A stretch of DNA of 64,000 nucleotides. Origin: Haliotis cracherodii. Its lineage: Eukaryota. Positions 1-63,989 of the stretch are shown one piece after another (position 1 is the first letter of the stretch; every line of letters starts with the position of its first letter). The notes under the pieces were generated by a model, which did no database searches, was not told where the DNA came from, and was given only the letters and a program-made list of their open reading frames with translations. The translations under genes were made by a program, and so were the position numbers. The DNA is taken from assembly GCF_022045235.1 (NCBI RefSeq), contig NW_027266319.1:37634001-37698000 (forward strand). Reading direction: 5' to 3'.

Positions 1-1180
1 CTTGGTCAGTAACTTCCGACAAGTATGGGTATCATGTGTAGCTAAGACAGAAAAGTATCACACTGACTTTTTATATACATTTCAGTACCAGTGTGATGTG
101 TTAATGTCGCTTTTCAATTTTTTCGGTAACCTTTCATCAATTCAGTTTGCAGTGACGGCTGGTTTGGTACCGACTGTGATAAACAGTGTCGGTGTCTGAA
201 CAACACAGAAGTCTGTGACAAGAACACAGGACAGTGTCTTGGTGGCTGTGCTCCTGGGTACACCGGCATTGGATGTCAGACAAGTGAGAACCTTTCAATG
301 TTTCTGTGAAAACAATGACCATTTTTATGGTAATGTTTCCATATGTTGAATGAAGATAATTTGAATTGCTTGCACATGTGCACACTTGTGCGGGTGTACG
401 TTGTTTGTGTAAAACGTGTTAAATCGATATGATGATATTATACTATACGGATACAAGCTGGCCCAGATAATGAAATTACTTTGTGTGAGGTGCAAATATT
501 CGGTAAGTACTGGATATTTGAACTGATAGTTATTAATACCCTATCATAACTAGTCACCGCTTATTACTTTCGTATGGGCCTAAATATTTGCGTTTAATCA
601 CACTGTGCATTGATAGTTGTACTAAAACATCGGAGAAACGTCTGTATGTGACGGTGATAGACATTCAGCTGTCTTGGTCAGTAACTTCCGACAAGTATGG
701 GTACCATGTGTAGGTAAGACAGAAAAGTATCAAACTAACTTTTTATATACATTTCAGTACTACTGTGTTGTATTAATGTCGCTTTTCATTTTTTTCGGTA
801 ACCTTTCATCAATTCAGTTTGCAGTGACGGCTGGTTTGGTACCGACTGTGATAAACAGTGTCGGTGTCTGAACAACACAGAAGTCTGTGACAAGAACACA
901 GGACAGTGTCTGGGTGGATGTGCTTCTGGGTACACCGGCATTGGATGTCAGACAAGTGAGAACCTTTCAATGTTTCTGTGAAAACAATGACCATGTTTAT
1001 GGTAATGTTTCCATATGTTGAATGAAGATAATTTGAATTGCTTGCACATGTGCACACTTGTGCGGGTGTACGTTGTTTGTGTAAAACGTGTTAAATCGAT
1101 ATGATGATATTATACTATACGGATACAAGCTGGCCCAGATAATGAATTTACTTTGTGTGAGGTGCAAATATTCGGCAAGT
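1..1180 (+). repeat. 672-bp tandem duplication carrying one EGF exon plus the 3' tail of an F-type lectin exon
   Basis: 1-505 recurs at 673-1177. Relics TIRIQAGPDNE(I/F)TLCEVQIFG at 442-502 (donor gtaagt) and 1114-1174 (donor gcaagt) match the end of gene B lectin exon 2 (VTIRVPDASDIYLTLCEVQIFG). Confidence 0.9.
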
Positions 1181-4100
1181 TGTAGTTATTTCAACTGACA
1201 GATATTAATATCCTTAAAATTTTACACACTGGTGTTGCTGGTAATGATTTCAAATTGATGTCGTTAATTCAGTTTTTACAGTTATGGCCCTTGCTCCATG
1301 ATTGTAAACCTAGTGCATACTACGTGAAATGGGTACAAGTTTTCTCAGAAACTACTGAATTTACCCAGTAGATACTTGTCAAGTTTGAAAATTGGTCCTG
1401 TCAATGAATTGTTTACAGATTGACGGCCTTAGGTCCGTGTCATTTGTGCAATGGGGACAAGTTTTCCCAGAAACAACTGAAGCTAGCTTATCTAAGAGAT
1501 CCTTATCAAGACAATTATTGTTTCCAGAGAAATCGCCTTTTGTGTGTATTAATTTCACATTGAACAATTTTTTCTGACAAAAAGCGGCCCACGTGCCTAT
1601 CTCTTCTGTAGGCTTCGTGGGGCTCTTTTTATAGTTTATATTCACTACGTATACTATATGAACAAACTTCAAATTTGCCTCATAGCGGGGGTCAGTGATA
1701 ACTCTGTTTTCTTGTTTTATCTGGGGACGAGTCGGTATTGTACCACATGGCAAATTGCTGAATTATAGTGACACAGAGGTTAAAGTATGTTCCACTTAAT
1801 TGTGCGTCTTAAGAAATGTATATACTACCGACAAAAAGTAAGGGAACTGATAAAGTGAAGGTGTAATGACGATAAATGTTTGTAAATTGTGTCCACCATT
1901 TTGGACGATACATGTTCGACACCTTGATAGCATACTGTTGTTAACCTTGCGTATGTTACCTTTGGTATTGAAAACCATTCTTCCTAAAGTGCTACCCCAA
2001 GCTAGACCATGATGGCGGGTACAAGGTCTCTGGTGTACGTTCTCCGCCCGAGAACGTCTCACAGATGGTCTATTAACCACGACCGGGACAATCGGCGACG
2101 ACCTGGGCACGATGTGCTCTCGCATTGTCATCTTGCAGTTCAAAAGTTCTGCCGATAATTCCAACGAAAGGAACAACGACGGGACGCATAATTTCGTTCA
2201 CAAATCGTTCGCCAGTCAAACGACCATTCACAATAACCCCATCAGTTCGCCTGTAATGTGTGATTCCGGCCCACACCGCGACACTACCGCCCCCTTACCG
2301 ATCATGGTCAAGAATTGTTGGCCTGGCATGCCGCTCGCCGCTTCGTCGCGAACAACGTTTACTGCCATCTGTAAATCGGAGGAAAAACTTTGATTCTTCT
2401 ATAAACATGGTGTAACACCACTGGGTCACAGCCATTCCCTAGTGTTGTGTAGCCCACCCCACCCTTTGACGCCTGTGCTAAGCTGTTAGGGTCACACCCT
2501 TCACATGGCGCCTTGCATTCAGGCGGGCTGCATAGTAGATGTTGAAATTCGCCTTCCTGTTATTGTAAGGAATTTTCTATAGATAACAGGAACATATCTG
2601 AATCTATTACGTAGTGCAGTTAATGTAATGAGAAGATCGTGTCTTGGTGTCGTGTGTTTAGTCCTGCCACTCCCACTCCACCCGTTTGACGGTTTTGTCC
2701 CCAACTCGAGACAGTACACATTTTTTTTTAAAAACAACGTTTGGTTAATATCTTACAATTTATGCTTTTATTTCTATCAGGAAGAGAAAAACACTGACAT
2801 TATCAGATATATCTGTCTATTTCTATAGTATGTAAATTAAAAAAGAGAAAAACTCAATTGTAAATCTGATATAAAATGACCATCATGATATTGCATGTAT
2901 TTTGGGCCAGAAGCCTTTTACTGAATAACAAGACTAGGTCTGTAAAGACTCCAAGGCCTAATTCAAATACACTGGCGAATGTCAGCATGGCTGTATATGT
3001 AACTTTATGGAGCCTCAAGATGAAACGATGATGAATATGAATACATAGTAAGACAAAAAATTATCAACCTTGCAAATACGTCTTAGAACGTAAAATTAAA
3101 AAAAATCTGAATAAACTTTTGGCAGCTTAATACTAATTGAGGGGGCACTGGTGGCCCAGTCGTCTGAGGTGCCGCGATGCGCTTTGCAGAGTTGCGTCCC
3201 TTGGTCACGCCAGAAACCTATGATTGTGGGTTCGAACCCCGGTTCGCCCTGATTATGTTTTCTAGGTTTGTCAGCACCATATAGCCGTGTTCATGGGTTT
3301 CATCGAAGTGTTAAACGTCTGAAACCAGCATCACTTTGGGCTTTCCTCCCACTTTAAGCTGACACGCAGCGATATAACTGGAATACTGTTAAAGGCGGCA
3401 TAAAACCCAATTCACTCACTAATGCTAGTTGCAAGACGTTCACAGTTGGATTACATCTCAATAACTAGCATTTTGAAGTTATAATTTCACAAACATTTAT
3501 ATCTGTTTCTTTAGCCGTCACAGAGGAAGTATCAAACTGGGGACTTCCTGTAGCAATAACCCTGGGCACGTTGCTGATATTCACGGTGATCGCGGCAACT
3601 ATCTACATCAAACGGTAGGAATAGCTGACTCTGTCATAAAAAATCACGTTTTCGAAAGGGAAAAAAAGGATTTTAATTACTTATCCTTTGATTAACAAAC
3701 TGTTGTGTATCAAACTATTATGTTCATAAAAATAGTATTACTTACTAACCACTTATTATTTTCCTGCACCATGAAAAACCTCTTCAAGAGGTCATACATT
3801 GCGAATGAACCCTAAAATACACAGCCTTCCTTTAAAAGAAGGAAAACTTTATGTTTTTAAATAGTGTCAAGGATTCTGCCGAACGGCTAGCATTTCCTCG
3901 ATCAAGACTGTTTGTCCTCACTAATTTGTACCTCTGTGTACTGAATCGTTTATATATGGTGAAATTTATATTTCGTCACTATCACAGTCATTTCAACAAA
4001 ATTAAATTAACTAAAATGCTGTGTTAATTATATCAACCAGATAGTTTGAAAATTAATTTTGTACACAGAGGTACAATTAGTGAGGACAAACTGTCTTGAT

Positions 4101-4982
4101 CGAGGAAATGCTTGTTCTACGAATAACCGTTCTTACACTGCTAATGAGTGTGGTAGCGTCTTTGTCAACACCCATGTTTTGTATACTAGGTTACTTTACC
4201 GGTGTGCATATTGGCGTTGTATTTTAACTATCTTCTTGTGGTATTATTAGCTTTTACTTATATGTGCAAGAGAAAGCGATCAACATCGAGAAAATGTTTA
4301 TGTGTGGGCTCAGCTTTCACACTACAATTACAAAATGTGCAAACTTACAGTACTACAGTCACACATGTCATAGATGTCAGATGCCATCCGACCCGTGAAG
4401 ATCCGGGGTTAAATAGGTCTTCAGCAACCCATGCTTGCCGTAAAAGGCGACTATGCTTGTCGTAAGAGGCGACTAACGGGATCGAGTGGTCAGGCTCGCT
4501 GACTTGGTTGATGCATGTCATAGTATCCCAATTGCATGGATCGACGCTTATGATGTCAATCACTGGATTGTCTGGTCCAGACTCGATTATTTTCAGACCG
4601 CCGTCATATAGCTACAATATTGCTGAATGCGGCGTTAAACAACAAACAAACATTAGCCATCCAACATGTGATAGTGGTTAAGTACGTTTCGAATCGTTAC
4701 CCTTCACGATATATCACACGTCAGTCGCCTCAGTCTCTTATAGTTTAACTGATCTTAAAGTTTACATGTTTTAGAGCATAGGCGAGTTATTTTACATTAC
4801 GTTTATGTTCAATTTACTAAGTTACTTTGCATGTCAGATTGATGAAGCAACTGGATGACTTGAAAACCATGATGTCTGAGGAACACTATGTGGGACTTGA
4901 TGAGAGGACAACTGACCAAGCAACATGCAATACCTACGAAAAATGTGAAAATGTTTCACCTTACCACATTTCCGTTAAATAG
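146..4982 (+). CDS. Gene A (5' end outside window): EGF-repeat, single-pass membrane receptor with tyrosine-motif tail; exons 146-283, 818-955, 3515-3614, 4838-4982
   Basis: Canonical AG/GT exons with compatible phases. Two 138-nt EGF exons (CSDGWFGTDCDKQCRCLNNTEVCDKNTGQCLGGCAPGYTGIGCQT), a TM exon (VTEEVSNWGLPVAITLGTLLIFTVIAATIYIKR) and a last exon (LMKQLDDLKTMMSEEHYVGLDERTTDQATCNTYEKCENVSPYHISVK*). Exon structure parallels genes B and C. Confidence 0.8.
2030..2700 (-). mobile_element. Decayed Tc1-family transposase fragment in gene A intron
   Basis: Fragments GSGRTKHTTPRHD..LRNRF, MWAGI, FELQDDNARAHRA; multiple stops and frameshifts. Confidence 0.8.
3141..3420 (+). mobile_element. tRNA-derived SINE family B
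   Basis: A box (TGGCCCAGTCG) and B box (GGTTCGAACCC), tail ...GGCATAAAACCCAATTCACTCACT. Other copies at 11550 (-), 12406 and 35030. Confidence 0.85.
3862..4140. mobile_element. Palindromic MITE-like element
   Basis: ~50-bp inverted repeats at 3890-3941 and 4061-4111 (GCATTTCCTCGATCAAGAC...GTACCTCTGTGTAC). Confidence 0.6.
4391..4650 (+). mobile_element. SINE family A (core GCTTGTCGTAAGAGGCGACTAA, (CAAA)n tail)
   Basis: Dispersed repeat. Further full or partial copies near 9290/10090, 15337, 15988, 22380, 23390, 25010, 46950, 51740 (-) and 58950 (-). Confidence 0.85.
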
Positions 4983-5169
4983 TTCAGCGTGTAAATTGAT
5001 GGTTGTATCATCTGTTATGGAAGAGGGGATGACACGCTGCAGATATGTACATCTAACATCTTGAATCAATTTAATCAAAACGATTTCTGTGTTAATTATC
5101 CCATTAAACGGTGTTTGCAAAATGCGTGTAGAAACATAGCTTGTATTTTACAGTGATAGGGATGAATAG

Positions 5170-19744: not shown

Positions 19745-19904
19745 TTATATTCGGCCCCGGTGGACTTCCCCTGCGTTGGCATAAGGACTGGTATTGTCAA
19801 CGTGTTCGTATATGTTTTCCACAACTGGATCCCTGGTGTTCTCATCAAGAGATATGTAGTTATCTTCAGGCTTCTTTTGCAAGGCATCCAGTTGACGCTT
19901 CAGT
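19745..19904 (-). CDS. Gene B last exon, cytoplasmic tail
   Basis: LKRQLDALQKKPEDNYISLDENTRDPVVENIYEHVDNTSPYANAGEVHRGRI*; acceptor TTTCAG; homologous to 58009-58156. Confidence 0.85.
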
Positions 19905-22900
19905 CTGAAATGTACAGCAATAAGCTAGTAAGGCTAATCATTTCAAGATGATTAGGTACATGTATATCCCTTTACGAATATGAAATAGGCACCACTTGTT
20001 GACGGTACACACACGCTATTGTTTTCACTGAAATGCAATTGATCATGCGTTCATCACCCTCTTGCATACTACTGCCATCAATGTAAGGAGATCACGTAAG
20101 TCTCTGTGATTTGTATCCAATCCTAATAGTCCCTTGAATAAAATATGTTTAAATAAATCGATACAATTATCGCCAGCTGTACAATATACATTCGTATACA
20201 TGTATGTTTGTACCAACTGAAACATTGCTGGTATACTTGACACATATGTACATACCCCTATACGATTCGATTATGTGGATCAAACAACGAAAGTTCTGCG
20301 TGAAATATGAAATGTGCTTCATGTCATAATACTGCATTGTAATGGACATAGACTAATGATAATGAACGACGAATCATCGATGGTAATAATATGATAATGG
20401 TAATTATATGATATGGTGGTTATAATCCGTCAGTTGGAGTCTCTAATGCACAATTAGCAAAGAATCGGTTAATGTTGCTCAATATTATGAATCCTCTTTT
20501 CATGTTCATGATACTTTATCTTTAACACATTACACGATCCCTACCTTCTGATGTAAAAGATGGACGTCAACAGAGCGATGGCAGCCAAGACGAGAAGTGT
20601 ACCGAGTGTTGCTACAACTGGCGCTTCACGGATTAAACATCCTGGTGTTGCCGCAAACACTGTACAACATTGTTTTTAAAACAAATAAGTGGTTCATATT
20701 CCTTATTCTTCTGAAAGTATGGGTTCGAATCCGGGACGGAACTGAATAAAGTACTAGCTATAGAGTACAATCGCAAATATAACATTTGTTCATTTGAAAA
20801 CTTTCTAAAAGGCATTGTGTATTCATTTCTGTCGACCATGGGACAAATATTCATACTGGTTATGAGTCTCCAAATGGCGATTTGAGGGAGTCTATCCAAA
20901 TCCTCTTGCAACAATGAAAGCAGGGAAAACACTACTGCACGATAAGCAGAATCAATCAGATTGACAGAAATAATGGTCCCTCCATTTGATATGTTCAAAT
21001 CTGATTGTTAGCAAATCCATCTCCGCCACATGCCTCGGACAGCTCTCTGGGCAGGAAAACGTAGAAGACACCCGCATCTGTCATATATGCCATGGAAGTT
21101 GAAACACCGTGCTTTCCGCCAATAACAACCACGATACACTGTCGTCAATGTAAGAATAGCGAGCGCGACGGAAGCGCAAACACCTGCTGTAATTTTTGTC
21201 AGCGGAGTTTATCCTTCGCCTGAGCGATCTTGTATCACCATTTTATAATGCAAATATAATCAGATGTGGAAAATATATGTGGAAACAGTGTCTGTTATAC
21301 AAACGTAACTATATTATATAATACTTTTTTCATACAACATGAACATGAATGTATTGCATAATGAACAATAATCCTGTATATACTCACAACTCAAGCACGT
21401 ATCAGTGGTCCACCTTTGTGCACATCCTCTCGGACATGTCCCTGTGGTCTTGACACATACATCTCCATTTAGGCAGTTTCCGCATTGGGAGGAGCAGTTG
21501 ATACCGTAGGAGCCGTCTTGACAAGCTGTCCATGTACATAGTTACTTTAATATTTTATAACTATTCTGATAAGAAGCACGGCCTAATAGTCCATACTCAC
21601 TCACTCACTCACTCACTCACTCACTCATAAACTACTGAATGTAGTTGAAACAATTGGGGGCAAACTTAGCCCCATAACCTCCGTCTGGGGATCTTGTGGA
21701 CATAACATGAAGCTGTAGACAGTGACACGAACACCCGTCAGTGAACACAAACTCTCAGTGAGTGTAAGCTTCAGTGATGGTGTGAGTGATGAGGGTTAAA
21801 AATATGTACAGTTTGTGTGCATATTGTTTCAGTATATTGTCCATTACGCTTGACATGGAAAAATGTCTACCATTTTATGCGCTCAGCGTCCTATGTACAT
21901 GTAGGTGGATTTAATTATTGCTGAAAGTTTCTACTATTTGGCAATACAAGTGTTCGTGGTATTTATATTGGAGATAAGCGCTAAAACGCTCGTTTCAGAA
22001 CTAAAATAAGAATTATGCAATCAACAGTTATAATACATGAAAATGCCAAACACAGTAAGTGTAGCTTCGTTCTTAATTATGCATGGAATAACAGTTCAGC
22101 TACCTTAGAACAGTCTCAAAAGGGGCACAGGTCGTAGAAAGGGTAAGAACTTGTACTGAAGTCCAAGATTAATTACTTTGATTCTTGAAATAATGTGTAA
22201 CAAAATGCGTATCTGTTTCCATGAAATAACCCTCCATACAGATACACAGCTTCATCGCAACATGTTGTTTTTATTGCACCTCGACTTAACTATGCCATCT
22301 GAGATGGCAGATTGAGTTAGCAATGATATTTGTACCGGAATGTATTGCATAATGCACACTAACCCTGTACATACCAACAACTCTCATGATGCCAATCACT
22401 GGATTGTCCTGTCCAATTGCTGGAATATTGCTGAGTGCGGCGTTAAACAACAAACAAACAAACATACTCATAACTCAAGCACGTATCAGTTGTCCACCCA
22501 GATTCACATCCTCTTGGACATGTCCCTGTGGTCTTGACACAAACATCTCCATTTAGGCAGTTTCCGCACTGGAAGGAGCAGTTGATACCACAGGAGCCGT
22601 CTTGACAAGCTGTCCGTGTACATTGTTTCTTTCATTAGTACTTATTAATTGTATTAAGAAGAGGTTCGGCATGAGGCCATATTCGCTCACTCACTTACCA
22701 GTAGATAGTTGAAATGGTTGGAAAAAAGTACCTACCCTGTGAACACAGATCTGGTAACCATCCAAACAGGCATCCTCGAGGACATTTCCCTGTTACCTTG
22801 TCACAGACAGCAGTGTCCAGACAATGGCCACAATGAGACGCACAATTGGCACCATAACGTCCGTCTGGGCATGCTGTAGACAGTAACATGAACACCTAGC

Positions 22901-25900
22901 AATGAGTACAGACTCTTGTCGGGTGCAAGGTTAGGTTATGCATGAGAGATGCCGGTAAAAAATATCTTTAGTTTGTGAGCATCATCCAATCATATCAGGC
23001 ACATTTTAGCATATTGTCCATTACTCCTGACGTGGACAAAATACATGTCCACCACTTTATTCGATCAGTTGAAGTTTTAACTTTGTTTCATAAAATAACT
23101 GTATTTCTGTAAATCAGATAATCACTAAGGGGATAAACTCTAAAGCACTCAGCTCTAAATTAATATAAGAAGTATTCCATCTCTAGTTACACAACCTCAA
23201 ATTAATGTGGTTGATTCTTGAAATAATTGTAACAAAATACGTATCTGTTTCCATGAAATAACCCTGCATACTAATACACAGCTTGATCGCAACATGTTGT
23301 TTTTATTGCACCTCGACCTAACTATGTCGTGTAAAATTTGTACAGGAATGTATTGCATGGTTCACACTAACCCTGTACATACTCACAACTCTCATGATGT
23401 CAATCACTGGATTGTCTGGTCCAGACTCGATTATTTTACAGACCGCCGTCATATGGCTGGAATATTGCTGAGTGCGGCATTAAACAACAAAGAAAAAAAA
23501 AAAACATACTCACAACTCAAGCACGTATCCGTAGTCCACCCTGATGCACATCCTCTCGGACATGTTCCTGTGGTCTTGACACAAACATCTCCATTTAGGC
23601 AGTTTCCGCACTGGGAGGAGCAGTTGATACCATAGGAGCCGTCTTGACAAGCTGTCCATATAAATAGTTACTTTAATTAGTATTTATTAATTGTATTAAG
23701 AAGAGGTTCGGCATGAGGCCATATTCGCTCACTCACTTACCAGAAGGTAGTTGAAATGATTGGAAAAAAGTACCTACCCTGTGAACACAGATCTGGTAAC
23801 CATCCAAACAGGCATCCTCGAGGACATTTCCCTGTTACCTTGTCACAGACAGCAGTATCCAGACAGTGACCACACTGAGACGCACAACTGGCACCATAAT
23901 GTCCGCCTGGGCATACTTTTTGAATATAACCTGTACGTGAATGTATTGCATAATGCACAATAATCCTGTATATACTCACAACTCAAGCACGTATCCGTAG
24001 TCCACCCTGATGCACATCCACTTGGACATGTTCCTGTGGTCTTGGCACATCTGTCTCCATTTAGGCAGTTTCCGCATTGGGAGGAGCAGTTGATACCGTA
24101 GGAGCCGTCTTGACAAGCTGTCCATATCAATATTTACTTTGATATTTTATAACTCTTCTAATAGGAAGCACGGCCTAATACTCCATAATACTTACTAACT
24201 CACTCACTCACTCACTCACTCACTCACTCACTAATTAATGCAGTTGAAACAAATGGGGGCAAACTTAGCCCCATAACCTCCGTCTGGGGATCTTGTGGAC
24301 ATAACATGAAGCTGTAGACAGTGACACGAACACCCGTCAGTGAACGCAAACTCTCAGTGAGTGTAAGCTTCAGTGATGGTGTGAGTGATGAGGGTTAAAA
24401 ATATGTACAGTTTGTGTGCATATTGTTTCAGTATATTGTCCATTACGCTTGACATGGAAAAATGTCTACCATTTTATGCGCTCAGCGTCCTATGTACATA
24501 TAGGTGGATTTAATTATTGCTGAAAGTTTCTACTATTTGGCAATACAAGTGTTCATGTAAATCTGGTATTTATATAGGAGATAAGCGCTAAAACGCTCGT
24601 TTCAGAACTAAAATAAGAATTATGCATATATGCAATCTATAGTTATAATGCATGAAAATTCCAAACACAGTAAATGTAGCTTCGTTCTTAATTATGCATG
24701 GAATAACAGTTCAGCTACCTTAGAACAGTCACAAAAGGGGCACAGGTCGTAGAAAGGTAAGAACTTGTACTCAAGTCCAAGATTAATTACTTTGATTCTT
24801 GAAATGATTGTAACAAAATACGTGTCTGTTTCCATGAAATAACCCTCCATACAGATACACAGCTTGATCGCAACATGTTGTTTTTATTGCACCTCGACCT
24901 AACTATGTCGTGTCTTGGAAGGTGCTGAGATGGCAGATTGAGTTAGCAATGATATTTGTACCGGAATGTATTGCATAATGCACACTAACCCTTTTCATAC
25001 CCACAACTCTCATGATGCCAATCACTGGATTGTCTTGTGCAGACTCGATTATTTTACAGACCGCCGTCATATAGCTGGAATATTGCTGAGTGCGGCGTTA
25101 AGCAACAAACAAACAAACATACTCATAACTCAAGCACGTATCAGTTGTCCACCCTGATGCACATCCTCTCGGACATGTTCCTGTGGTCTTGACACATACA
25201 TCTCCATTTAGGCAGTTTCCACACTGGGAGGAGCAGTTGATACCACAGGAGCCGTCTTGACAAGCTGTCCGTGTACATTGTTTCTTTCATTAGTACTTAT
25301 TAATTGTATTAAGAAGAGGTTCGGCATGAGGCCATATTCGCTCACTCACTTACCAGAAGGTAGTTGAAATGGTTGGAAAAAAGTACCTACCCTGTGAACA
25401 CAGATCTGGTAACCATCCAAACAGGCATCCTCGAGGACATTTCCCTGTTACCTTGTCACAGACAGCAGTGTCCAGACAATGGCCACAATGAGACGCACAA
25501 TTGGCACCATAACGTCCGTCTGGGCATGCTGTAGACAGTAACATGAACACCTAGCAATGAGTACAGACTCTTGTCGGGTGCAAGGTTAGGTTATGCATGA
25601 GAGATGCCGGTAAATAAAAAATATCTTCAGTTTGTGATCATCATCCAATCATATCAGGCACATTTTTAGCATATTGTCCATTACTCCTGACGTGGACAAA
25701 ATACATGCCCACCACTTTATGCGATCAGTTAAAGTTTTAACTTTGTTTCACAAAACAACAGTGTTTATGTAAATCAGATAATTACTAAGGGGATAAACGC
25801 TAAAGCACTCAGCTCTAAATTAATATAAGAAGTATTCCATCTCTGGTTCCACAACCTCAAATTAATAAGACAAAGTAGGTTTATGTCTATTCTACCCTGA

Positions 25901-28900
25901 CAAGAACGCTTTAAAATGGTACTTTTTGAGAAGGTGTATTTACACATGAGTACATAGGTCAGCTATCTTTCTAACATTCTGACATGGTGTCACGGGTAGT
26001 GGGAAACGAAACAATTAACTCATCGATCACGATTAATTACTTATATTCTTGACTCATTCAAAATAAAACAAACGCGTTTCATTTTTTTTAAACAATTGAC
26101 AAAATAACCCTCCATAGATAAAAAATTATATTTTATTTCATCGCAACATGTTGTATATCTTGTACTGCTTAGAGTCAACTGTGTCGTTTCTTGGAAATTG
26201 TATTGCATGTTTTTGTGACACACTGGTTAGTGTATGTTTTACTTAATGGTGCGTATTCTGAAATAGATATTATCATGTTTGTTTAGCCGTTGTAAACAAG
26301 TACTTGTTCAGTGTTCAGTCGAGTGAAAAATCCATCCGATGAATTTCTGATATTGAACTTATATAGTTCTAATAAGTTGTCGGCAGCCATTGTTATATGC
26401 ATCAATGTATGGGGACTTCCCGGAATGCCGGGAAATAATGTAACATTGATATATGTTTCGTGAGTACTAGTATGGAAACTCGAATTTTTTTACTTCTGAA
26501 ACTGTCAGTAATAAATGAAAAAGAATGTGTCTGTCCTTGTTATTTTCTATTTGAAATATGTATCCTTGACACGATCCTCATGCTTGTAACAACAATGGCA
26601 TGGTACATCTACAATTACGTGCGGGTATAGCGGGAGTAAAACGATATATAAGCTATCGATTGTTCGATGTAATCACAAGTAACGGGCTTGTTTCAAAAAT
26701 CTTGTTAATTTTGGGCTGTCATTTCATTTTGACCAGTCAGAAAGAAGCATTCTTCTGTGTCATGGTAGCTCTGTCGTACTTTACTTCATTACTTCGGATA
26801 ATACTCCCGAATTCAAATTCAAGAAGTAGCGTGTATTAGGTAGTCATATATATCATCATAATAATATTAAATATTGCAACATCAACATTTTGTAAATCAA
26901 GGGCATGGGAATGCTTAGGCACATAAGTAATGCGTTGGAAGGGTGGGCCAGGATATATTCTAACGCAAGAAGTGTACTCTAACAATCTGACACATGTATC
27001 TTAAATATCGAATCATACACACTGTCCATTTATAACATTGTATAGCGATTTTAACATGTTCACCTTGTCACACTTCTTGCCATAGAGTCTTTCGGCGATT
27101 GTTTTGTCACTCTCATTCTTTATGTATTGATCTAAATTGGGACTTCTTGCGCAGAATGTTTTTCTCCCTGATTTTGCAAAGATGTTACTCCCTTTTCACC
27201 CAATGATAATTCAAATCAAAGTATCTGCATTTAACATGTGGAAACTTAGACATAAAATTGGTCATTTTTCACATATACACTGAAAACTCATTCCTCACGT
27301 GTCTGACAATCTATGCCAGTTTTCCCGGGAGCACAGCCACCAAGACACTGTCCTGTGATCTTGTCACAGACTTTTGTTTTCTTAAGACACTGACACTGCT
27401 TATCACAATCGGTACCAAACCAGCCGTCACTGCAAACTAAATCGATGAAAGGTTACAGAAACCAATTTCAAAATCGATATAAACGCTTCACAAAGTGAAA
27501 CGAATATATGTTACAGGAAACAAGTATAATCAGTGATTAAGTCTAATGACTGAAAATTTCAGTGATTATGTCTAATAACTGATTCACTCGGTGGTTATGT
27601 CTAAATACTGAAATCTTCAGTAATTAGACATAATCACTGAAATGAACCAAGGGATTTTATACTTGTTTACTGAAAGCATATTCCTGCCTTGTTTTTATAA
27701 TGTGTGCTAGTTTTGAAATTAGATTAGCTATCAAAGTAAATACAACCTCCTGTTACCAGATACCTTACACAAAAATCACAGAAATAAGCTTAAACAGTTC
27801 AATCTTTTATTTCATAAAATGGTATGACGTGAATGGTATGACAAATAGCTGTCTGATGGACACTCAGGAATGTTTGTTTGCACATGACAGACTTGAATGA
27901 CATCTAGATTTACATTGCATCTTGGCCTTAAAACATTTGCAGCGATTGGTCTGACACCGTTTAGTTTCAACACAATTACACCTTACAAAGCCTTGACCAC
28001 CACAGACTGAGTCAAGTTGAACCGCTTGACGCAAAGAGAGTGTTCAATCGGTATTGAAATCGTCAGCATTATACAGTTTGGTTTGGTTCAGTAATTAGAC
28101 ATAACCACCGAGTGAATCAGTTATTAGACTTAATCACTGATTATACTTGTTTCCTGTAACATATGTTTTGATTTCTATGGACAACTAGCGAAGCCTTCTC
28201 AAATGTTGTTACAACACATGATTCTGTTTGTTTACAGGAGATTGGCTTACGACAGGATTATGAAGCCTTCTCACAAGTTATTATAAAAAGGCAGGGATAT
28301 GCTTTCAGTAAACAAGTATAAAATCCCTTGGTTCATTTCAGTGATTATGTCTAATTACTGAAGATTTCAGTTATTAGACATAATCACTGAAGTCAAATTA
28401 AAAACTTCACATTTTAAAAAGTAATCCCATATATGATATACAACGGCGAATGTATCAGAGAAGGTAATTTTTAAACATTAATGTCCAAAGAAGGATTTTA
28501 ATTAACGGTGGTAACCATAATTTGTTCCCAGCACCTACGGTATTCGGTAAAACGTCAACAGTTTAAATCATAAGTCCCAAGCACCAGAATCTCATGGAAC
28601 ACAAGTTCAGTAGCGTGTATGGCCACCATGTGCATTGACAACTGCCAAACAACGCCTCCGCATGGACCTTGTGATGCTTGTGAACACATGATTGGGAAAA
28701 CGACGCCATTGTTGCTGCAAAATGGTGTCAAGATCTTGCAAATTCTGTGGTTGGTTCTGGAGAGTGTGCAGACTTCTGCCAAGAGCATCCCAGACGTGTT
28801 CGATGGGATTGAGGTCGGGAGACCTTGACGGCCAGTCCATGACGTTGACTCCCGCATCCTGAAGGAAATTCCTTGTCAAAATTGCCGTGTGGGGTCTGGC

Positions 28901-58008: not shown

Positions 58009-61000
58009 CTAGTGGACTTCCCCTGCCTGTGCATAAGGGCTGGTATTTTCAATTTCTTCATATGTGCTTTCCGTAGCTGGATCCCTGGTCTTCTCATCCA
58101 GAGATATGTAGTTATCTTCGGGCTTCTTTTGTGAAGCAGACAGTTGACGCTTCAGTCTGAAATATACAGCAATAAGCTAGTAACGCTATCAATTTCAAGA
58201 TGATTTGTTGCATTTATATCACTTTACGATTATTGAATAGGTAGCAATAGGTAGCAACACAACCCTTATTAGTTTCACTGAAATGCAACCGATCATATGT
58301 AAATCCTGCTCCTGTATATTTTGAACAAAACTGCAACCAGTGTATTCAATATCAATGTAAGGAGACGGTGTGGTAAGTGACTTTTAATCAATCATAATAT
58401 TTTTCAATCAATCAATACAATTTTCGCCAACTACACAATATATATTCGTATATGTTTGTACCAACTGATACCTTCCTAAAATCTTGACATGAATTTACAT
58501 ATTTGTATATGATTTTATCGTGTAGATCTAAACAATGAAGGTCGGGTTGAAATTTGAAACAAGGTTGTCAAGTTATTCATAGGAGAACACAAGAAAAATA
58601 ATATTCTTCGACGTATCGACGGCAATATGATAAATAGTATAATTCAGTATAAGTCTCTAATACACAATTAGCTAAGAAGCAGTTAATGTTGCTCAATATT
58701 ATGAATCCTCTTTTTATGTTCATGATATTTTATCTTTAACACATTACACGATCCCTACCTTCTGATGTAAAAGATGGACGTCAACAGAGCGATGACAGCC
58801 AAGACGAGAAGTGTACCGAATGTTGCTACAACTGGTGCTTCCCGGCTTAAACATCCTGGTGTTGCCGGACACACTGTACAACATTGTTATTAAAACAAAT
58901 ATGGTGTTCATATTCTTTAATATTTTGTGTAGTTCTTACAGCTTTAATCGTGTGTTTGTTTGTCTGTTGTATTCCAGCTATATGACGGCAGACTGTAAAT
59001 AATCGAGTATGGGCCAAACACTCCAGCGATTGACATCATGAGCATCGATCTACGCCTTTGAGATACGATGACATTCGTCAAACAAGTCTGCGAGCCTGAC
59101 CACCCGATCCCGTTAGTCGCCTCTTACGACAAGCATGGGTTGCTGAAGACCGATTCTTACCCGGATCTTCACGGGTACTGTTCTTTTGGTGATATATGCG
59201 TCTTTTATCACACAAATTAACTGTTCCTGTAATCTCTTATTGAAAGGGAAAAGTACATGATGTATGTCATATATCTTGTAATGAACTTGTGCTGGAGTCC
59301 TTAGAGTTGCCTTGATATGTCTTGCGAAGTTCCTTTCAAAGAGTAGTACGAGAATCAACAAATTATTTTACAATATTGATCTACTTATCAAGCATCAGGA
59401 TGACTGAGGAAAATTTGTAAATAGTTGACTTCAAAATTAAAAAAGAGAATGAAAACGTCTATCTTTTCTTCCTATGGCTTGTTGCGTGTTCCTACCTTGG
59501 CACAGGGGCTTCATGAAGTTGCCCTGACATCCTTCAGCACACTCCCCACTGGACTTCTCACAGGTCCGGGCGTCTTTACACTGACCACATCGCGACATGC
59601 AGTCATCCCCGTACATTCCATCAACGCATTCTGGCGAGTAGACGACATATACTTTTCATCTATTCACTTTACTTTATGATATACTGGCAAGACTATAGCG
59701 ACCAGGGCAAGGAGAGTTGTTTTGTGCAAAAAGAGAGAACAGTAACATCCATCACATTGCATCCCACCTTTACAAGTGGGTTCTTGAAACCCTGGCTGAC
59801 ATCCCTGGTCGCATGTTCCATTGATCTTGTTACAAGGCAGGTTTCCTTTACATTGACCACACTCGGACTGACAGTGGTGTCCATGACGACCGTCACTGCA
59901 AGCTGTAAGAAACAATATCTGAAATCCTCAAGGACATTTCAATGACATCTTTTCACAGACATCAGTGCCCAGACAGTGACCCAGTGAGACGGGCAGATGA
60001 TGTCCGTCGAGGCATGTGGCAGTGAAATGAATATTCATCCAATGTTTCAAATCCTCCGGATACGTCGTTTGATATCTGGCCCCGAGCGCTACGCGGGGAA
60101 TTTGTCCGTGTATTTCTATCTACTCCCGTCCTTAAGCAATTAAGATGTTCGTGATTTAAAACTTTCTCTTTTCTTCTATGTGGACTCCAGTATTGCATGT
60201 AGTTGCAAAGACCTTGTAATTACATTTATGGTGACGTGGGCAAGACTTTGGATAAAAAAGTAGTTTGTGGAAGATGTAATACCCAAAATCAACACTCATC
60301 ACATAGCCCTTGTAAATGCACTGAACAGTTCTAACAACAGTTTGAATGTGACACATCAGTCAGATGAGTAATTATTTAGAATCAAGAAAGTACCTAAATT
60401 GTGCAGTGCTGCTTTCAAAAGAAGTCACTTCTTTATCCATAATCAGAATCCATATTTCTTTACCACATTAGGAAGCTATTTTACATGTCGTTATTGGAAA
60501 AATAAACTGTGTTCATGTCACCGGGTCGTTATTTTTCTGGTGTCTCGGTCTCGTGCCGCTCCACGGTTTTATTTCCGACACCGCTCGGCTAATTCCGGCG
60601 GTCGTAGGTGTACAGTGTCATTACATTCTGTGTTAGGAATTTAGTGGCCCAACCATTTCATTCTCTTGTGATCTCATGAGGGGTACTCAAAGTACGTGAT
60701 CTAGACTACAAGTTGTCGGACTCTCGTTTTTGTGGAAGTCTCGGTGGCTGAGTGGGTTAGATCGCTGACTTTGTGTGCTGGAGACTAGGTGCCTCACTCT
60801 GGCAAGTGTGGGTTCGTAAGTATGATTTTCAAACATTAGGGGAATTTATATGTACACTGAGATATTTCTCATGTATTTACGATCACTTCTGCCTCCTCAG
60901 TAATTGTACATAGCTTGTTGCAAATCTTTAATGCTACCGTTGGATAGCTTATGTTCGGCGCTTTATTTTGATACTTACATCTTCAGTATAAATATAGTAG

Positions 61001-63989
61001 TTAGTTTGCAATTTGAGTTGTCCCCATGTTTAGAAACAAACGTTGGCTAAGTGCCCTAGTATATTCGTTTGGACCGTTGGTACGGATCGGTGTGCTAGCT
61101 TGGGGTCACGGTGGAAACTCAGGTTTCGTTAGTAAGTGATTTCGGGGCCCTTTTTTATCTTCTACTGACTCACTCTGGTTGTATTGAGATAAACGTAATT
61201 ACTAGGGTTTCCCATACTCGTATTTTCTACTACTCCGTGGATAACCAACATCGCCTTGATTGTCTAGCTACAAGTTACTTAGTAGCTGGTGTTTCCAATA
61301 CTCCGTTTTCTAGTAATCCCAGGATAACCAAGCTTGGCCCCTGATTGTCTAGTTATTTGAGAATTTTGGTATTTCCTTGTTCAGTCAAAATGACTCAGTC
61401 GATCAGACCAGTTTGATATTCAGACGTACTCGTCTATTTTGTAGTCGTGTAAGTTTATTTCCCGTTATTTAACCCAGGCGAGGTTTTTCACTCATTAGAG
61501 TGTTAAGTTGATTGACTCAGGTGTTAATTTGACGCAGCCGACTTAATTGGCTGTTTAATTATCTGGTCGGTGTCTTGTCAAAATGTTTTAACTGATCTCA
61601 TTTTATTGCTGCAATACAGTTGCTTAGCTGTGCCACATGTGTTTTTTCTCTGAATTAATTAATCAGTGATCTTTGTCAGCGCAGATTGGGTTTATCTGAT
61701 CTATTATTGTCATCTATTAGTACATTTAGCTGTAATTGATAAACGTGTGAAGCTATTACCACGTTTTCATTATTAATTTATTATTATTTAATGACACTCC
61801 TGATCATTGGAGCAAAGCTCCGTGGCAATTCACATTTCACATTATTCAAGAGAGTTGTACAGTTATGAATATAAGTAGTTATTCTGTGACGGAACTTTGT
61901 ACGGCGTCGATCTTACGTCAACTGTGTAACAGCTATGTGTCCTATATTCATGATCAGTGACATCTGTATCTATTGTTTGTTAGAAGCCCTTTAAAAGTTG
62001 ATTCGTGGTTGCAATGTAAAATGTGGCAATGCAGCACACCAGATAGTGAGTGAGTGAGTTAATGCTTTACGTCACATCGGCAATATTTCAGCCATATCGT
62101 GACGACACACCAGATAGTGGAGTTATACAGGTATAAATATACCGCCAGAACATAGAACGACTGCGATTCTCCGACAATGGTACAACGACTATTGCTCCTA
62201 TATTTTTGTCATCTACATCTATAGTTCGTGAAAACCCTTTATAAAAAGGGTCCGGCAATGCAGACCATTCTCTACCTAAAAGGCGAGTTGGCATGAAATA
62301 AGAGCAGATGCTCATAGTGCATGTGTGGCAAAGGTGAGACCCCTGGAAGGGTGTTAAAGGCTGTGTAATGATGTCTGGCCTGACGAAACCAGTTGGTGTC
62401 TTGGCTGATGACTCAAGGAGATTTGACTTAAAGAAAGTTCAAATGCCTAAATTGCATACGGGGATGGTTCCATTCCATTGGAGTAGCAGTTCAGTTTCTC
62501 TGACGTGTGTCGTATGGTGGCAATGAGAGCTTGATGTTGCGTACTATGGCTGGAGTGTCAGCTGCCATGTCATGAGCGAGTGGGCAACCATCGGAAGAGT
62601 GACAAGATGGCATGCCACTAATAGACAGACTACAGGCTTTGTCATGTGTTTTGCATATTCGTGTATGTGTTGTTCTTTGTACCAGTGTCATTGGCCATAT
62701 CACTAGAACTTGAAACCAAAGAAGTAAAACAATTCTGCTTAAATGCATCTGATAATTCACTGCCTTGGAAACAAAGTTGTATCCTTCGACAATACTGAAA
62801 GCTATTCCTGACATTGTATTTGTGTTGGCATTTAACATATGTTAGTATATAGGATATGACATGAGATGAGTTGGTTCAGTACTGTTTGGAATTAGATTCA
62901 TGAGCTCTGGCTATCTATGTGGCTATGATGCATACTAGTATATTCTTCGTCTGTATCATCTTTATCATATCTGAAATGAACCAAGGGTGTGTAAATACAA
63001 TGACGAAAAGTTAACGCTACATGTACCTAATTCTCTCCTTGGGCATTCCTGCGGACCGTTTGTGAAAAAGACGGTGGATCTTAGTGGGTTGAACCTGTAG
63101 ATCTCTCGCTACTCGTGTTGCCGTAACACCAGCTTCAATAATGCCCAATACTCGATGACAATTGTTTATGACTAATCCGAGCATGGTGCATTCAAAGAAC
63201 TAGCTGACGTGTGTTGCAACGTTTCGCTTTTATGAGTACCTTCAACACCCAAAATTGCATATTGCACATTTAAAACATGCATGTTGTTCTCGGAAGGTGC
63301 TCAGAAAGACACGTGTTGGCTAATCTGACGCATGGATGTGAAAAGATGTTATTCTATCAAAGTGTGTGTTTTGTTGTGCAAATAAATAACCATTATTAGA
63401 TATTAATGAGGTTGAGAGTTGCAATATAACACTTGCTTATCTTTTGGAACTTAGTGGAACTTGTAAAGGGATGCACGTGAGCGTCTAGGAGGACACAAAT
63501 AAGATATCACAATAGAGTATGTGGGTCACATTCTTTATCATATTGTCCGAAAGCGTTACCGATAATGAAGACAGAGGTCTTATTTGAGGCATCAAATATT
63601 CATTGTACATCGATGTAATGACTGATAAGATTAATTAAATCTTTACAAGGAAAATGGCAAATTAAATTATTTACCAGAATGATCATTTTTCTCTCATCAA
63701 GTATCCCCAAAAAGTAGTCTGAATTCGTTTAAGTAACAACAATGTGAACAAAAAGGTTGAAACACTGTCTGTTATGCAAAAGTAACCACATTATATTATA
63801 CTTTATAAATAAAACCTGTAAATAAATTAATGCAGAATGCAATATACTCACAACTCAAGCACGTATCAGTGGTCCACCCTGGTGCACATCCTCTCGGACA
63901 TGTTCCTGTGGTCTTGACACATACATCTCCATTTTGGCAGTTTCCGCACTGGGAGGAGCAGTTGATACCATAGGAGCCGTCTTGACAAG
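58009..63989 (-). CDS. Gene C (5' end outside window): EGF-repeat receptor with ITAM-like tail; exons 63852-63989, 59768-59902, 59496-59630, 58759-58873, 58009-58156
   Basis: EGF exons CQDGSYGINCSSQCGNC.., CSDGRHGHHCQSECGQC.., CVDGMYGDDCMSRCGQC... TM exon VCPATPGCLSREAPVVATFGTLLVLAVIALLTSIFYIRR. Tail LKRQLSASQKKPEDNYISLDEKTRDPATESTYEEIENTSPYAQAGEVH*. Canonical splice sites. Confidence 0.88.
58945..59175 (-). mobile_element. SINE family A in gene C intron
   Basis: Reverse complement of the family A consensus. Confidence 0.85.
59920..60018 (-). pseudogene. Decayed EGF exon relic in gene C
   Basis: CLDGH..GHCLGTDVCEK..KCP*G, with deletions and a stop; same type as gene B CPDGRYG exons. Confidence 0.6.
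63040..63457 (-). mobile_element. Tc1 5' remnant
   Basis: MLGL..RVLGIIEAGVTATRVARDL resembles the N-terminal HTH of the other Tc1 copies. Confidence 0.55.

What the first reader, a model, noticed from the sequence alone, without database searches (positions are those of the whole stretch)
146..63989. Clustered family of F-type lectin / EGF-stalk / TM / ITAM-like receptors: a candidate invertebrate glycan-sensing immune receptor system
Seen: three paralogs (A plus; B and C minus) share exon structure and a three-tyrosine tail. Complete gene B joins a signal peptide, an F-type lectin domain, a variable EGF stalk, a TM helix and a short tail with no catalytic domain. Known: F-type lectin domains bind fucose-type glycans in innate immunity. 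Draper/MEGF10/CED-1 phagocytic receptors couple EGF stalks to an ITAM read by Src and Syk/Shark kinases, but use an EMI domain at the N-terminus. Inference: this is a diversifying family of lectin-headed signalling receptors, functionally analogous to Dectin-1 or CLEC-2 but built from different parts. Automated annotation would probably call these only multiple-EGF proteins. The lectin head is directly seen only in B; A has relic lectin-exon tails and the 5' end of C is outside the window.
Basis: partly seen in the sequence, partly recalled or inferred. Interest (0 to 1): 0.92.

Follow-up and report, generated by a model that had tools for sequence, protein, structure and literature searches.

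The report
Abalone lectin-EGF receptors with ITAM-like tails
This black-abalone window holds three copies of a single-pass membrane receptor with a fucose-lectin-type head, an EGF stalk and a short tail with three conserved tyrosines; the family is real but already annotated and described in snails, and what is new is the ITAM-like tail and its pairing with phosphatase-tailed sister genes.

Summary
The observation largely holds. The window (Haliotis cracherodii, G000:C56:37.634-37.698 Mb) carries three paralogs with the same phase-1 exon layout: F-type lectin head, 135-138-nt EGF cassettes, a TM exon, and a tail exon with three invariant tyrosines.

- **Head:** a divergent F-type lectin. Family profile against 3CQO gives E=5e-38, and Foldseek's top hits are 1K12 and 3CQO.
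- **Tail:** YxxL-x12-YE[HEQ][IV] followed by PYxN. It is conserved in all 14 genome copies and in four Haliotis species. A sister subfamily has canonical YxxL-x8-YDVI.
- **Cluster:** about 0.8 Mb with 19 heads, 13 ITAM-like tails and 5 tandem-PTP genes. ITAM-type and PTP-type ectodomains are 70-82% identical and interleave on a tree, which resembles paired receptors.

- Gene B's ancestral signal-peptide exon is degenerate; a replacement exon is only a candidate.
- Gene A's RefSeq model stops before the TM exon.
- B versus C shows purifying, not diversifying, selection.
- The architecture is annotated as "MEGF10/draper-like" and was described in Biomphalaria in 2025-2026, without any mention of ITAM.
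- RNA-like contigs support only the lecC-to-EGF1 junction of B.

The scan had already noted lectin-EGF phosphatase genes on other pieces of this genome. Signalling, glycan binding and an immune role remain inferred.

The parts
146..283 (+). Gene A, EGF1-type exon (copy 2 of 3; 138 nt, phase 1-1)
   Evidence: Matches residues 251-297 of P0003 (XP_071083842.1), the RefSeq model of gene A.
442..531 (+). Gene A, relic of the last 30 codons of a lectin C-terminal exon (intronic)
   Evidence: tblastn to B's lecC, 63% over 30 aa; blastn 81% to 30199-30103.
818..955 (+). Gene A, EGF1-type exon (copy 3). The RefSeq model reads through its GTGAG donor to a stop at 978.
1114..1215 (+). Gene A, second relic of the lectin C-terminal exon (contains a stop)
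2941..3015 (+). Gene A, degenerate last-EGF exon with an in-frame stop
   Evidence: Aligns to the last EGF of P0068.
3515..3614 (+). Gene A, TM exon (phase 1 in, 2 out), intact splice signals
4838..4982 (+). Gene A, tail exon: YVGL-x12-YEKC, then SPY, then stop. A polyA signal lies at 5103.
19745..19904 (-). Gene B, tail exon: EDNYISL-x12-YEHV, then SPYAN, then stop
20545..20659 (-). Gene B, TM exon (115 nt, phase 1 in, 2 out)
21388..25528 (-). Gene B, EGF stalk of 138-nt phase-1 cassettes: 25528-25391, 25264-25127 (donor AT), relic 24353-24234, 24117-23980, 23915-23778, 23651-23514, 22873-22736, 22609-22472 (donor AT), 21525-21388
   Evidence: Includes a 1.9-kb internal duplication at 92% identity.
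27299..27436 (-). Gene B, EGF1-type exon
   Evidence: RNA-like unitigs in runs X1 and X2 are bounded exactly by this exon.
30139..30327 (-). Gene B, lectin C-terminal exon (ends ...LTLCEVQIF)
   Evidence: An X1 unitig stops at the donor and carries 26 further letters.
30908..31159 (-). Gene B, lectin N-terminal exon (NVAL...CTHT...LYLRRD)
31499..31618 (-). Gene B, exon 2: Cys-rich half-EGF cap (CHC...CQEGWFGPYCQK)
31640..31690 (-). Gene B, degenerate remnant of the ancestral signal-peptide exon
   Evidence: alignment with exon 1 of A and C.
31955..32006 (-). Gene B, candidate replacement first exon (hydrophobic start, phase-1 donor). Unverified.
   Evidence: Unique in the genome. No RNA-like coverage.
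58009..58156 (-). Gene C, tail exon: EDNYISL-x12-YEEI, then SPYAQ, then stop
58759..58873 (-). Gene C, TM exon
59496..59902 (-). Gene C, two 135-nt EGF exons (59902-59768, 59630-59496). A relic EGF exon with a stop lies just upstream at 60029-59935.
63852..63989 (-). Gene C, type-a EGF exon. The rest of C lies beyond the window in L016: two more EGF exons, EGF1, both lectin exons, exon 2, and signal exon 1.

Best explanation
The window holds three members of a roughly 0.8-Mb abalone cluster of type I membrane receptors. They belong to the mollusc 'fucolectin/galactose-binding head + MEGF/SREC-type EGF stalk + single TM' family.

Each gene is built from phase-1 exon modules:
- a signal exon;
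- a Cys-rich cap;
- two exons for a divergent F-type lectin domain;
- a variable number of 135-138-nt EGF cassettes;
- a TM exon;
- a tail exon of about 50 residues.

The tail carries an acidic YxxL, twelve residues, then YE[HEQ][I/V], then PYxN.

Proposed mechanism (inferred). A multivalent ligand, probably a glycan, clusters the receptors. A Src-family kinase phosphorylates the tail tyrosines. These then recruit SH2 proteins: a Syk/ZAP-70-type tandem-SH2 kinase on the dual-tyrosine unit, and Grb2/Drk-type adaptors on YxN. The outcome would be uptake or cell activation. Sister genes in the same cluster keep a near-identical ectodomain but carry tandem tyrosine-phosphatase domains instead. The locus would therefore act as paired receptors that set or oppose phosphotyrosine signalling for the same ligands.

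Shown: exon anatomy, lectin fold, motif conservation, the cluster with two kinds of tail, and one splice junction in RNA-like data.

Inferred: ligand, phosphorylation, SH2 partners, cell type, and an immune role.

Within the window itself, C looks intact, A may be truncated, and B has lost its original signal exon.
For: Architecture:
- Exons and phases.
- Full-length public relatives with the same order of parts: P0001, P0010, P0043, P0044, P0057, P0060, P0068.

Lectin head:
- Haliotis-only profile A2 hits the F-lectin 3CQO at E=4.9e-38.
- P0003 alone hits it at 6e-13.
- The AF2 model has pLDDT 88. Foldseek's top hits are 1K12, 3CQO and the lectinolysin and SpX-3 fucose modules, with TM-score on the target of 0.75-0.81.

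Tail:
- Three Tyr are invariant in 14 genomic tail exons, and the Y-to-Y spacing is invariant.
- The same motif occurs in H. rubra, H. asinina and H. rufescens.
- A sister subfamily has YxxL-x8-YDVI, and bivalve members have YxxI/L-x9-11-YxxL/I.
- 24 of 49 short tails fit the ITAM pattern, against 0.4 expected from shuffled tails.
- ITAM is defined as YxxI/L-x6-12-YxxI/L for Draper in PMC6219719.

Pairing:
- 19 heads, 13 such tails and 5 tandem-PTP genes lie on C56 between 36.9 and 37.7 Mb.
- ITAM-type and PTP-type ectodomains are 70-82% identical.
- On a head tree the two types interleave. At least 7 changes are forced by well-supported branches, and there are four within-species sister pairs.

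Signalling machinery in this genome:
- Src-like locus at C34:16.86 Mb.
- Syk/ZAP-70-like locus at C67:27.876-27.895 Mb, with two SH2 exons and a YY activation loop. Its best PDB hits include ZAP-70 and SYK.
- SHP2-like and Csk-like loci.
- ITAM-Syk signalling has been shown experimentally in an oyster (PMC6994640).

Expression:
- Unitigs in runs X1 and X2 are bounded by the EGF1 exon.
- One unitig ends at the lecC donor and carries 26 extra letters. These 26 plus the 4 extra letters on the EGF1 unitig make 30, which is k-1, so the two unitigs overlap across the lecC-to-EGF1 junction.

Constraint:
- B versus C dN/dS is 0.19 (lecN), 0.46 (lecC) and 0.21 (EGF1).
Against: - No read evidence links B's lectin exons to its TM and tail exons. 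No run is on record as RNA, and the N-terminal lectin exon had no coverage.
- No public protein model of B or C was retrieved.
- B's ancestral signal exon is broken.
- A's RefSeq model ends before the TM exon.
- The 12-residue spacer sits at the upper limit of the ITAM definition. The +3 residue of the second tyrosine is V in B and C in A.
- The tail of B versus C evolves faster than the head (dN/dS 0.54).
- The canonical fucose motif is respaced to R-x5-R and the Cys-Cys is lost. Pfam scores of the closest relatives stay below the gathering threshold.
- Biomphalaria member P0116 has a tail without tyrosines, so the motif is not universal in the wider family.
Confidence: 0.55

Rival explanations
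1. Endocytic scavenger receptor. The two YxxΦ units (YISL, YEHI) would be AP-2 sorting signals that drive constitutive or ligand-induced internalisation of bound glycoconjugates, as in class F scavenger receptors. No SH2-based signalling would be involved.
For: - Both motifs fit YxxΦ.
- The EGF repeats resemble SCARF1, Tie2 and MEGF-type repeats.
Against: - A sorting signal needs only one YxxΦ. It does not explain the invariant 16-residue Y-to-Y spacing, the acidic residues before both tyrosines, or the conserved third YxN.
- It does not explain why sister genes replace the tail with tandem PTP domains, or in other molluscs with kinase domains.
- The two readings are not mutually exclusive.
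Confidence: 0.2
2. The three copies in this window are largely decaying duplicates rather than working receptors. A would be a secreted or truncated lectin-EGF protein with orphaned TM and tail exons. B would be a 5'-damaged gene without a signal peptide. Function would reside in other cluster members.
For: - B's ancestral exon 1 is degenerate.
- Two B EGF exons have lost the GT donor, and relic exons with stops occur in A, B and C.
- RefSeq model P0003 of A stops at 978.
- No B or C protein is in the retrieved public sets.
Against: - B versus C dN/dS is well below 1 in the head and EGF1.
- All B and C coding exons listed under parts are open and have usable splice sites.
- B's lecC-to-EGF1 junction is present in RNA-like contigs that match B at 99%.
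- A's TM and tail exons are intact, with a polyA signal after the tail and none after the read-through stop.
- C has an intact signal exon.
- B's exon-2 acceptor is intact, and a phase-compatible upstream exon exists.
Confidence: 0.25
3. A non-immune role. The family would mediate cell-cell or cell-matrix recognition in development, the nervous system, mantle or shell formation, or gamete interaction. The lectin-like head would bind protein or endogenous glycan ligands.
For: - F-type folds also occur in non-lectin contexts, and the sugar motif is altered.
- A jelly-roll head followed by laminin-type EGF repeats resembles netrin and laminin LN-LE in the fold search.
- No tissue or challenge expression data were obtained here.
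Against: - Lineage-specific tandem expansion, activating-type and phosphatase-type pairs, and high haplotype divergence at the locus are typical of immune or allorecognition receptors.
- The related Biomphalaria clusters are associated with schistosome resistance.
Confidence: 0.15

Closest known systems
[quoted passage not shown]
   Same: - Signal peptide, fucolectin/galactose-binding head, EGF/Tie2-like repeats and a single TM.
- Either a small cytosolic tail (1B) or two PTP domains (1C).
- Paralogs clustered on one chromosome.
- Strong haplotype differences.
   Different: - Those papers report no motif in the small tail: 'ITAM' occurs 0 times in either. Here the tail has a conserved dual-tyrosine unit plus YxN.
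- Orthology between the abalone and Biomphalaria clusters was not tested.
- One Biomphalaria member retrieved here has no tail tyrosines.
Draper / MEGF10 / CED-1 engulfment receptors
   Same: - Type I receptor with an MEGF-type EGF stalk.
- Tail with an ITAM in the x6-12 sense.
- Read in flies by Src42A and the tandem-SH2 kinase Shark.
   Different: - No EMI domain; a Cys-rich cap plus an F-type lectin domain stands in its place.
- No NPxY.
- The tail is about 50 rather than more than 150 residues.
- Similarity is confined to the EGF repeats.
F-type lectins (eel agglutinin 1K12, striped bass FBP32 3CQO, lectinolysin lectin domain)
   Same: The same jelly-roll fold, with detectable sequence homology. 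The CxH(T/S) histidine and two arginines of the sugar site are kept.
   Different: - Membrane-anchored through EGF repeats instead of soluble.
- The motif is R-x5-R instead of RGDCCxER, without the vicinal cysteines.
- Sugar binding is untested.
Dectin-1 / CLEC-2 (hemITAM C-type lectin receptors)
   Same: - A lectin head coupled directly to a tyrosine motif with acidic residues before YxxL.
- No catalytic domain.
   Different: - Type I instead of type II topology.
- F-type instead of C-type lectin fold.
- Two spaced tyrosines plus a third, instead of one.
- The resemblance is an analogy only, recalled from general knowledge.
Vertebrate paired receptor families (KIR, Ly49, PIR, SIRP) and CD45-type receptor phosphatases
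   Same: Clustered genes with near-identical ectodomains but opposite kinds of cytoplasmic output. Heads are kept alike within a species.
   Different: - The counterpart carries its own tandem PTP domains instead of an ITIM.
- The activating form carries its own motif instead of using an adaptor chain.
- The comparison rests on general knowledge.
Oyster CgIgR (ITAM-bearing Ig receptor that recruits CgSyk; PMC6994640)
   Same: A mollusc type I receptor with an ITAM in its own tail. It shows that ITAM-Syk signalling operates in molluscs.
   Different: Five Ig domains instead of a lectin head with EGF repeats. The proteins are unrelated.

Membership tests
F-type lectin domain (FTLD) | F-type jelly-roll fold | tested here: met
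   - AF2 model of P0003 (RefSeq product of gene A; 52-83% identical to B's lectin exons) has pLDDT 88.
- Foldseek's top hits are 1K12, 3CQO, 3LEI and 2J1R, with TM-score on the target of 0.75-0.81.
F-type lectin domain (FTLD) | Sequence homology to solved FTLDs | tested here: met
   Haliotis-family profile A2 against 3CQO gives E=4.9e-38. P0003 alone gives E=6.2e-13.
F-type lectin domain (FTLD) | Reaches the curated Pfam threshold (PF22633 / PF00754) | tested here: not met
   - Closest relatives score 20-24 bits against a cut-off of 27.8.
- Single exons of B gave no hit.
- 24 of 32 more distant hits do pass.
F-type lectin domain (FTLD) | Fucose motif H-x(24-26)-R-x-D-x4-R/K with vicinal Cys-Cys | tested here: not met
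   - His of CxH(T/S) is kept in all members.
- The loop is R-x5-R in 37 of 47 family members, R-R-D-Y-S-S-R in B, and R-x7-R in A.
- The Cys-Cys is absent.
F-type lectin domain (FTLD) | Binds fucosylated glycans | not testable with these tools
   Needs recombinant protein and glycan arrays.
ITAM-bearing receptors | YxxL/I-x6-12-YxxL/I in the cytoplasmic tail (definition as in PMC6219719) | tested here: met
   Met by gene C (YISL-x12-YEEI) and by 12 of the 14 genomic tail exons. Gene B has V and gene A has C at +3 of the second tyrosine, so those two fail the strict pattern.
ITAM-bearing receptors | Tyrosines phosphorylated by a Src-family kinase and bound by a tandem-SH2 kinase | not testable with these tools
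   Only the presence of partners was checked: a Src-like locus and a Syk/ZAP-70-like locus in this genome.
Draper / MEGF10 / CED-1 | N-terminal EMI domain | tested here: not met
   No EMI hit in P0001, P0003 or P0010 at E<=1. The N-terminus is a Cys-rich cap followed by the lectin domain.
Draper / MEGF10 / CED-1 | NPxY motif in the tail | tested here: not met
   Absent from all 14 tail exons and from the retrieved Haliotis tails.
Draper / MEGF10 / CED-1 | MEGF-type EGF repeats | tested here: met
   - True MEGF10 and Draper proteins are found with P0001 at E of about 1e-37, through the EGF part.
- The EGF repeats also match Tie2 and SCARF1 repeats.
Mollusc fucolectin/GBD-EGF-TM receptors (Biomphalaria 1B/1C type) | Signal peptide + fucolectin/GBD head + EGF/Tie2-like repeats + one TM + small tail or tandem PTP | tested here: met
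   against the description read.
Mollusc fucolectin/GBD-EGF-TM receptors (Biomphalaria 1B/1C type) | Paralogs clustered in one chromosomal region | tested here: met
   19 heads, 13 tails and 5 PTP genes lie on C56 between 36.9 and 37.7 Mb.
Paired receptors | Near-identical ectodomains coupled to different cytoplasmic outputs within one cluster | tested here: met
   Ectodomains are 70-82% identical between types, and the two types interleave on the head tree.
Paired receptors | Opposing functional outputs | not testable with these tools
   Needs signalling assays.

The most novel reading that the evidence does not exclude
The abalone cluster is an invertebrate paired-receptor system. Lectin-headed receptors with a built-in ITAM-like tail, and receptor tyrosine phosphatases with near-identical heads, would be kept alike by gene conversion or repeated tail swapping. 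They would read the same glycan ligands to set a phosphotyrosine threshold for haemocyte activation or uptake. This would give a mechanistic reading of the small 'domain-less' tails in the schistosome-resistance-linked clusters of Biomphalaria, and a candidate locus for disease resistance in black abalone.
Probability: 0.35. Interest if true: 0.75.

Novelty: new member of a known kind. Interest (0 to 1): 0.5.

Why it matters
The same receptor family sits under two schistosome-resistance loci in vector snails. There its short-tailed members are described as having no recognisable cytosolic feature.

A conserved dual-tyrosine (ITAM-like) unit plus YxN, together with phosphatase-tailed partners that share the ectodomain, gives a concrete and testable signalling model for the whole family.

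Black abalone was devastated by withering syndrome. A polymorphic, expanded lectin-receptor cluster is therefore a reasonable candidate locus for resistance studies.

The case also shows that automated names such as MEGF10, draper-like or PEAR1-like hide the lectin head.

Tried and rejected
- **Pfam on single exons of B and C.** No lectin hit and only weak EGF hits. Homology had to come from profiles and from full-length relatives.
- **Joined spliced models.** Exons were searched apart by reference, and public full-length relatives (P0001, P0003, P0068 and others) stood in for the joined model.
- **Sequencing runs.** The run search found no run on record as RNA.
- **Laid contigs.** The DNA run X19 also has a hole at 30955-31616 at 95% likeness, so this absence is uninformative.
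- **Second TM-like ORF at 21208-21011.** It has the same splice phases as the TM exon but no relatives in the family. It is treated as chance or unexplained.
- **Candidate exon 1 of B.** No paralogous copy anywhere in the genome.
- **Tandem-SH2 loci at C1:59.02 Mb and C15:9.9 Mb.** These turned out Csk-like and SHP2-like, not Syk. The Syk-like gene was found at C67 instead.
- **Diversifying selection.** B versus C does not show it.
- **Literature.** Seven literature searches found no functional study of this architecture and no mention of ITAM for it. Subscription journals are not covered.
- **Typed string.** A 52-letter tail string was typed into the script by oversight and was not used.
- **Complex prediction.** Not run, because phosphorylation-dependent binding cannot be judged that way.

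Full report
**Origin and setting.** The window is G000:C56:37634001-37698000 of a 1.18-Gb, 80-contig assembly. It holds no N. Protein P0003 is XP_071083842.1, 'uncharacterized protein [Haliotis cracherodii]'. Its repeats 2 and 3 match two window exons, including the read-through tail at 956-978. The organism is therefore black abalone. The rest of the window is intron and intergenic DNA rich in transposon remains.

**What is in the sequence.** Six-frame reading, self-comparison and tblastn with the window's own exons show three paralogs.
- *Gene A (+).* It has two 138-nt EGF1-type exons (146-283 and 818-955) inside a 672-bp tandem duplication. Each copy of the duplication drags along a truncated relic of the lectin C-terminal exon (442-531 and 1114-1215). 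Further on lie a dead EGF exon (2941-3015), an intact TM exon (3515-3614) and an intact tail exon (4838-4982).
- *Gene B (-).* It runs from about 32006 to 19745. In order it has exon 2 (a Cys-rich cap), two lectin exons, one EGF1 exon, eight further 138-nt cassettes plus one relic, a TM exon and a tail exon.
- *Gene C (-).* In the window it has one type-a EGF exon, two 135-nt EGF exons, a TM exon and a tail exon. Its head lies 3-6 kb beyond the window's end.
- *Splice phases.* All extracellular modules are phase 1-1. The TM exon is 1 in and 2 out, and the tail exon starts in phase 2. This holds identically in all three genes.

**The head is an F-type lectin domain, but a divergent one.**
- B's N-terminal lectin exon finds only 32 proteins at E<=0.001 among 1.8 billion. 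The closest are Haliotis proteins.
- A profile built from Haliotis family members only (A2) hits the striped-bass F-lectin 3CQO at E=4.9e-38. P0003 alone hits it at 6e-13.
- The AlphaFold model of P0003 (pLDDT 88) has the eel, bass and streptococcal fucose-binding modules as its best structural matches.
- Pfam scores of the closest relatives stay under the curated threshold.
- The histidine and two arginines of the sugar site are kept. The loop is one residue shorter than canonical in most members (R-x5-R) and the vicinal cysteines are gone.
- Fold membership is therefore shown, and fucose binding is not.

**The tail.**
- The genome has 14 tail exons, 13 of them on C56 within 0.8 Mb.
- All keep three tyrosines and the same spacing: (D/E)(N/H)Y(I/V)xL, then twelve residues, then YE(H/E/Q/K)(I/V/C), then five residues, then (P/L)Y, usually followed by xN.
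- By the definition used for Draper, YxxI/L-x6-12-YxxI/L, gene C and 11 others carry an ITAM. Gene B has V and gene A has C at the last position.
- The same tail occurs in H. rubra, H. asinina and H. rufescens.
- A more distant Haliotis subfamily has the canonical spacing, YxxL-x8-YDVI. Oyster and scallop members have x9-x11 versions.
- Across 49 short tails the pattern occurs 24 times, against 0.4 expected from shuffled tails. These tails are related to each other, so this shows conservation rather than independent origin.
- The third tyrosine is mostly YxN, the Grb2-type motif. That assignment is from general knowledge.
- An endocytic YxxΦ reading fits the two motifs as well. It does not explain the spacing or the third tyrosine.

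**Cluster and pairing.**
- The lectin exon has 27 copies in the genome, 19 of them on C56 between 36.9 and 37.7 Mb.
- Thirteen of these genes end in the ITAM-like tail. Five end in tyrosine-phosphatase exons.
- Public models of both kinds exist. Their ectodomains are 70-82% identical over 334-478 residues in three species.
- On a maximum-likelihood tree of 42 heads, ITAM-type and PTP-type rows interleave. Starred branches force at least seven changes of type. Four well-supported sister pairs join an ITAM-type and a PTP-type head of the same species. This points to repeated tail exchange or to gene conversion between neighbours.
- The pattern matches vertebrate paired receptors, a comparison from general knowledge.
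- The genome also encodes Src-like, Csk-like, SHP2-like and Syk/ZAP-70-like proteins.
- ITAM-Syk signalling has been shown experimentally in an oyster.

**Expression.**
- No run is on record as RNA.
- In two small runs of one study (X1 and X2), a 142-letter unitig covers exactly the EGF1 exon of B (27299-27436) plus 4 letters, at a depth of about 27-32. The adjoining intron is covered at depth 4.7.
- A 153-letter unitig covers the end of the lectin C-terminal exon up to its donor (30139) and carries 26 further letters.
- 26 + 4 = 30 = k-1, which is the overlap expected of two neighbouring unitigs across a lecC-to-EGF1 junction.
- Both unitigs match B at 99%. Gene C differs by about 10% in the EGF1 exon.
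- This supports transcription and one predicted junction of B. The other junctions remain untested.

**State of the three genes.**
- *C* has an intact signal exon (L016:5956-5902) that is nearly identical to A's.
- *B.* The homologous stretch sits 20-70 nt upstream of exon 2. It carries a frameshift, a 20-nt deletion and a GC in place of the GT donor. A phase-compatible hydrophobic first exon exists at 32006-31955, but it is unique in the genome and unsupported. Two of B's cassettes have AT in place of the consensus GT donor.
- *A.* The RefSeq model reads through a good donor to a stop at 978. No polyA signal follows that stop, while one follows the tail exon. The model may therefore be truncated.
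- *Constraint.* B versus C gives dN/dS of 0.19, 0.46, 0.21 and 0.54 for lecN, lecC, EGF1 and the tail. This is purifying rather than diversifying selection.
- No protein identical to B or C was among the 153 proteins retrieved.

**What is known.**
- P0001 finds 211 relatives. Many mollusc proteins carry PF22633 or PF00754 plus EGF, and are named MEGF10, MEGF11, MEGF6, draper-like, PEAR1-like or receptor-type PTP.
I read it. In Biomphalaria sudanica the resistance region SudRes1 holds paralogous MEGF/galactose-binding-domain receptor PTPs and other MEGF/GBD genes.
[quoted passage not shown] Subgroup 1B has a fucolectin head and a small tail 'without identifiable domain signatures', and subgroup 1C is the same with two PTP domains.
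- Neither paper mentions an ITAM.
- F-type lectin reviews list transmembrane and EGF-containing mosaics, but not this receptor.

**Verdict.** The lectin head and the conserved tyrosine tail are supported, and the genes belong to an already annotated and recently described mollusc receptor family. The additions made here are:
- the ITAM-like reading of the short tail across the family;
- the paired ITAM and PTP organisation of the abalone cluster;
- the corrections on genes A and B.

Ligand, phosphorylation, partners and immune role are inferences.

Noticed in passing
window 21011-21208 (-): A second TM-like open segment lies between B's last EGF exon and its TM exon. It has an acceptor and a donor in the same phases (1 in, 2 out) as the real TM exon. 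No relative exists in the family (the only two other genome matches are weak, E 4e-4 and 2e-3, on C12 and C34). It could be a mutually exclusive exon or chance.
   Followed up: partly
window 28555-29610 (-), inside B's intron between the lectin and EGF1 exons: A Tc1/mariner-type transposase ORF (HTH_29, HTH_Tnp_Tc3_2), flanked by inverted repeats at 27503-27706 and 28088-28390. Summed contig depth in the DNA run is 10^5 or more, so the element is very high-copy and explains most of the 'shares' reported by the run search.
   Followed up: partly
window 9533-10027 (-), 38198-39246 (+), 54800-56400 (-): Remains of three other mobile elements: a LINE-type zf-RVT ORF, a DDE_3 transposase split into two ORFs, and a piggyBac-type DDE_Tnp_1_7 fragment.
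   Followed up: partly
window 5169-6896 and 42906-43488: Two tandem arrays, with periods of about 74 nt and about 72 nt (85-92% identity between copies), lying between the receptor genes.
   Followed up: no
window 26300-32150: Contigs of DNA run X19 differ from the reference by about 3-4%, with many small indels and a 40-nt insertion. Almost nothing is laid between 30955 and 31616 (most of the lectin N-terminal exon, and exon 2). The only indel inside B's candidate exon 1 is 3 nt long, while the three listed in the adjoining intron are 1, 1 and 4 nt. The organism name is coded, so this could be either polymorphism or species divergence.
   Followed up: no
P0038 (XP model 'protein draper-like', H. 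cracherodii, 899 aa): The model runs from one complete head and EGF stalk straight into a second partial lectin domain and a second EGF stalk, and has no TM. It looks like two neighbouring cluster genes merged by the gene predictor.
   Followed up: no
L021-L022 (G000:C1:59019303-59031651): A Csk-like kinase locus with two Csk-type SH2 exons 3.8 kb apart, upstream of one kinase domain. Either the SH2 exon is duplicated or there are two adjacent genes.
   Followed up: partly
G000, whole genome: The tyrosine-phosphatase domain gave 555 first-look candidates and many tandem arrays (for example C34:66.05-66.36 Mb and C6:19.99-20.68 Mb). This indicates a very large expansion of receptor-type PTP genes in this abalone.
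   Followed up: no
L025-L027 (G000:C67:27876013-27894607, -): A Syk/ZAP-70-family kinase gene with two SH2 exons and an activation loop carrying the YY pair. It is a candidate reader of the tails.
   Followed up: partly
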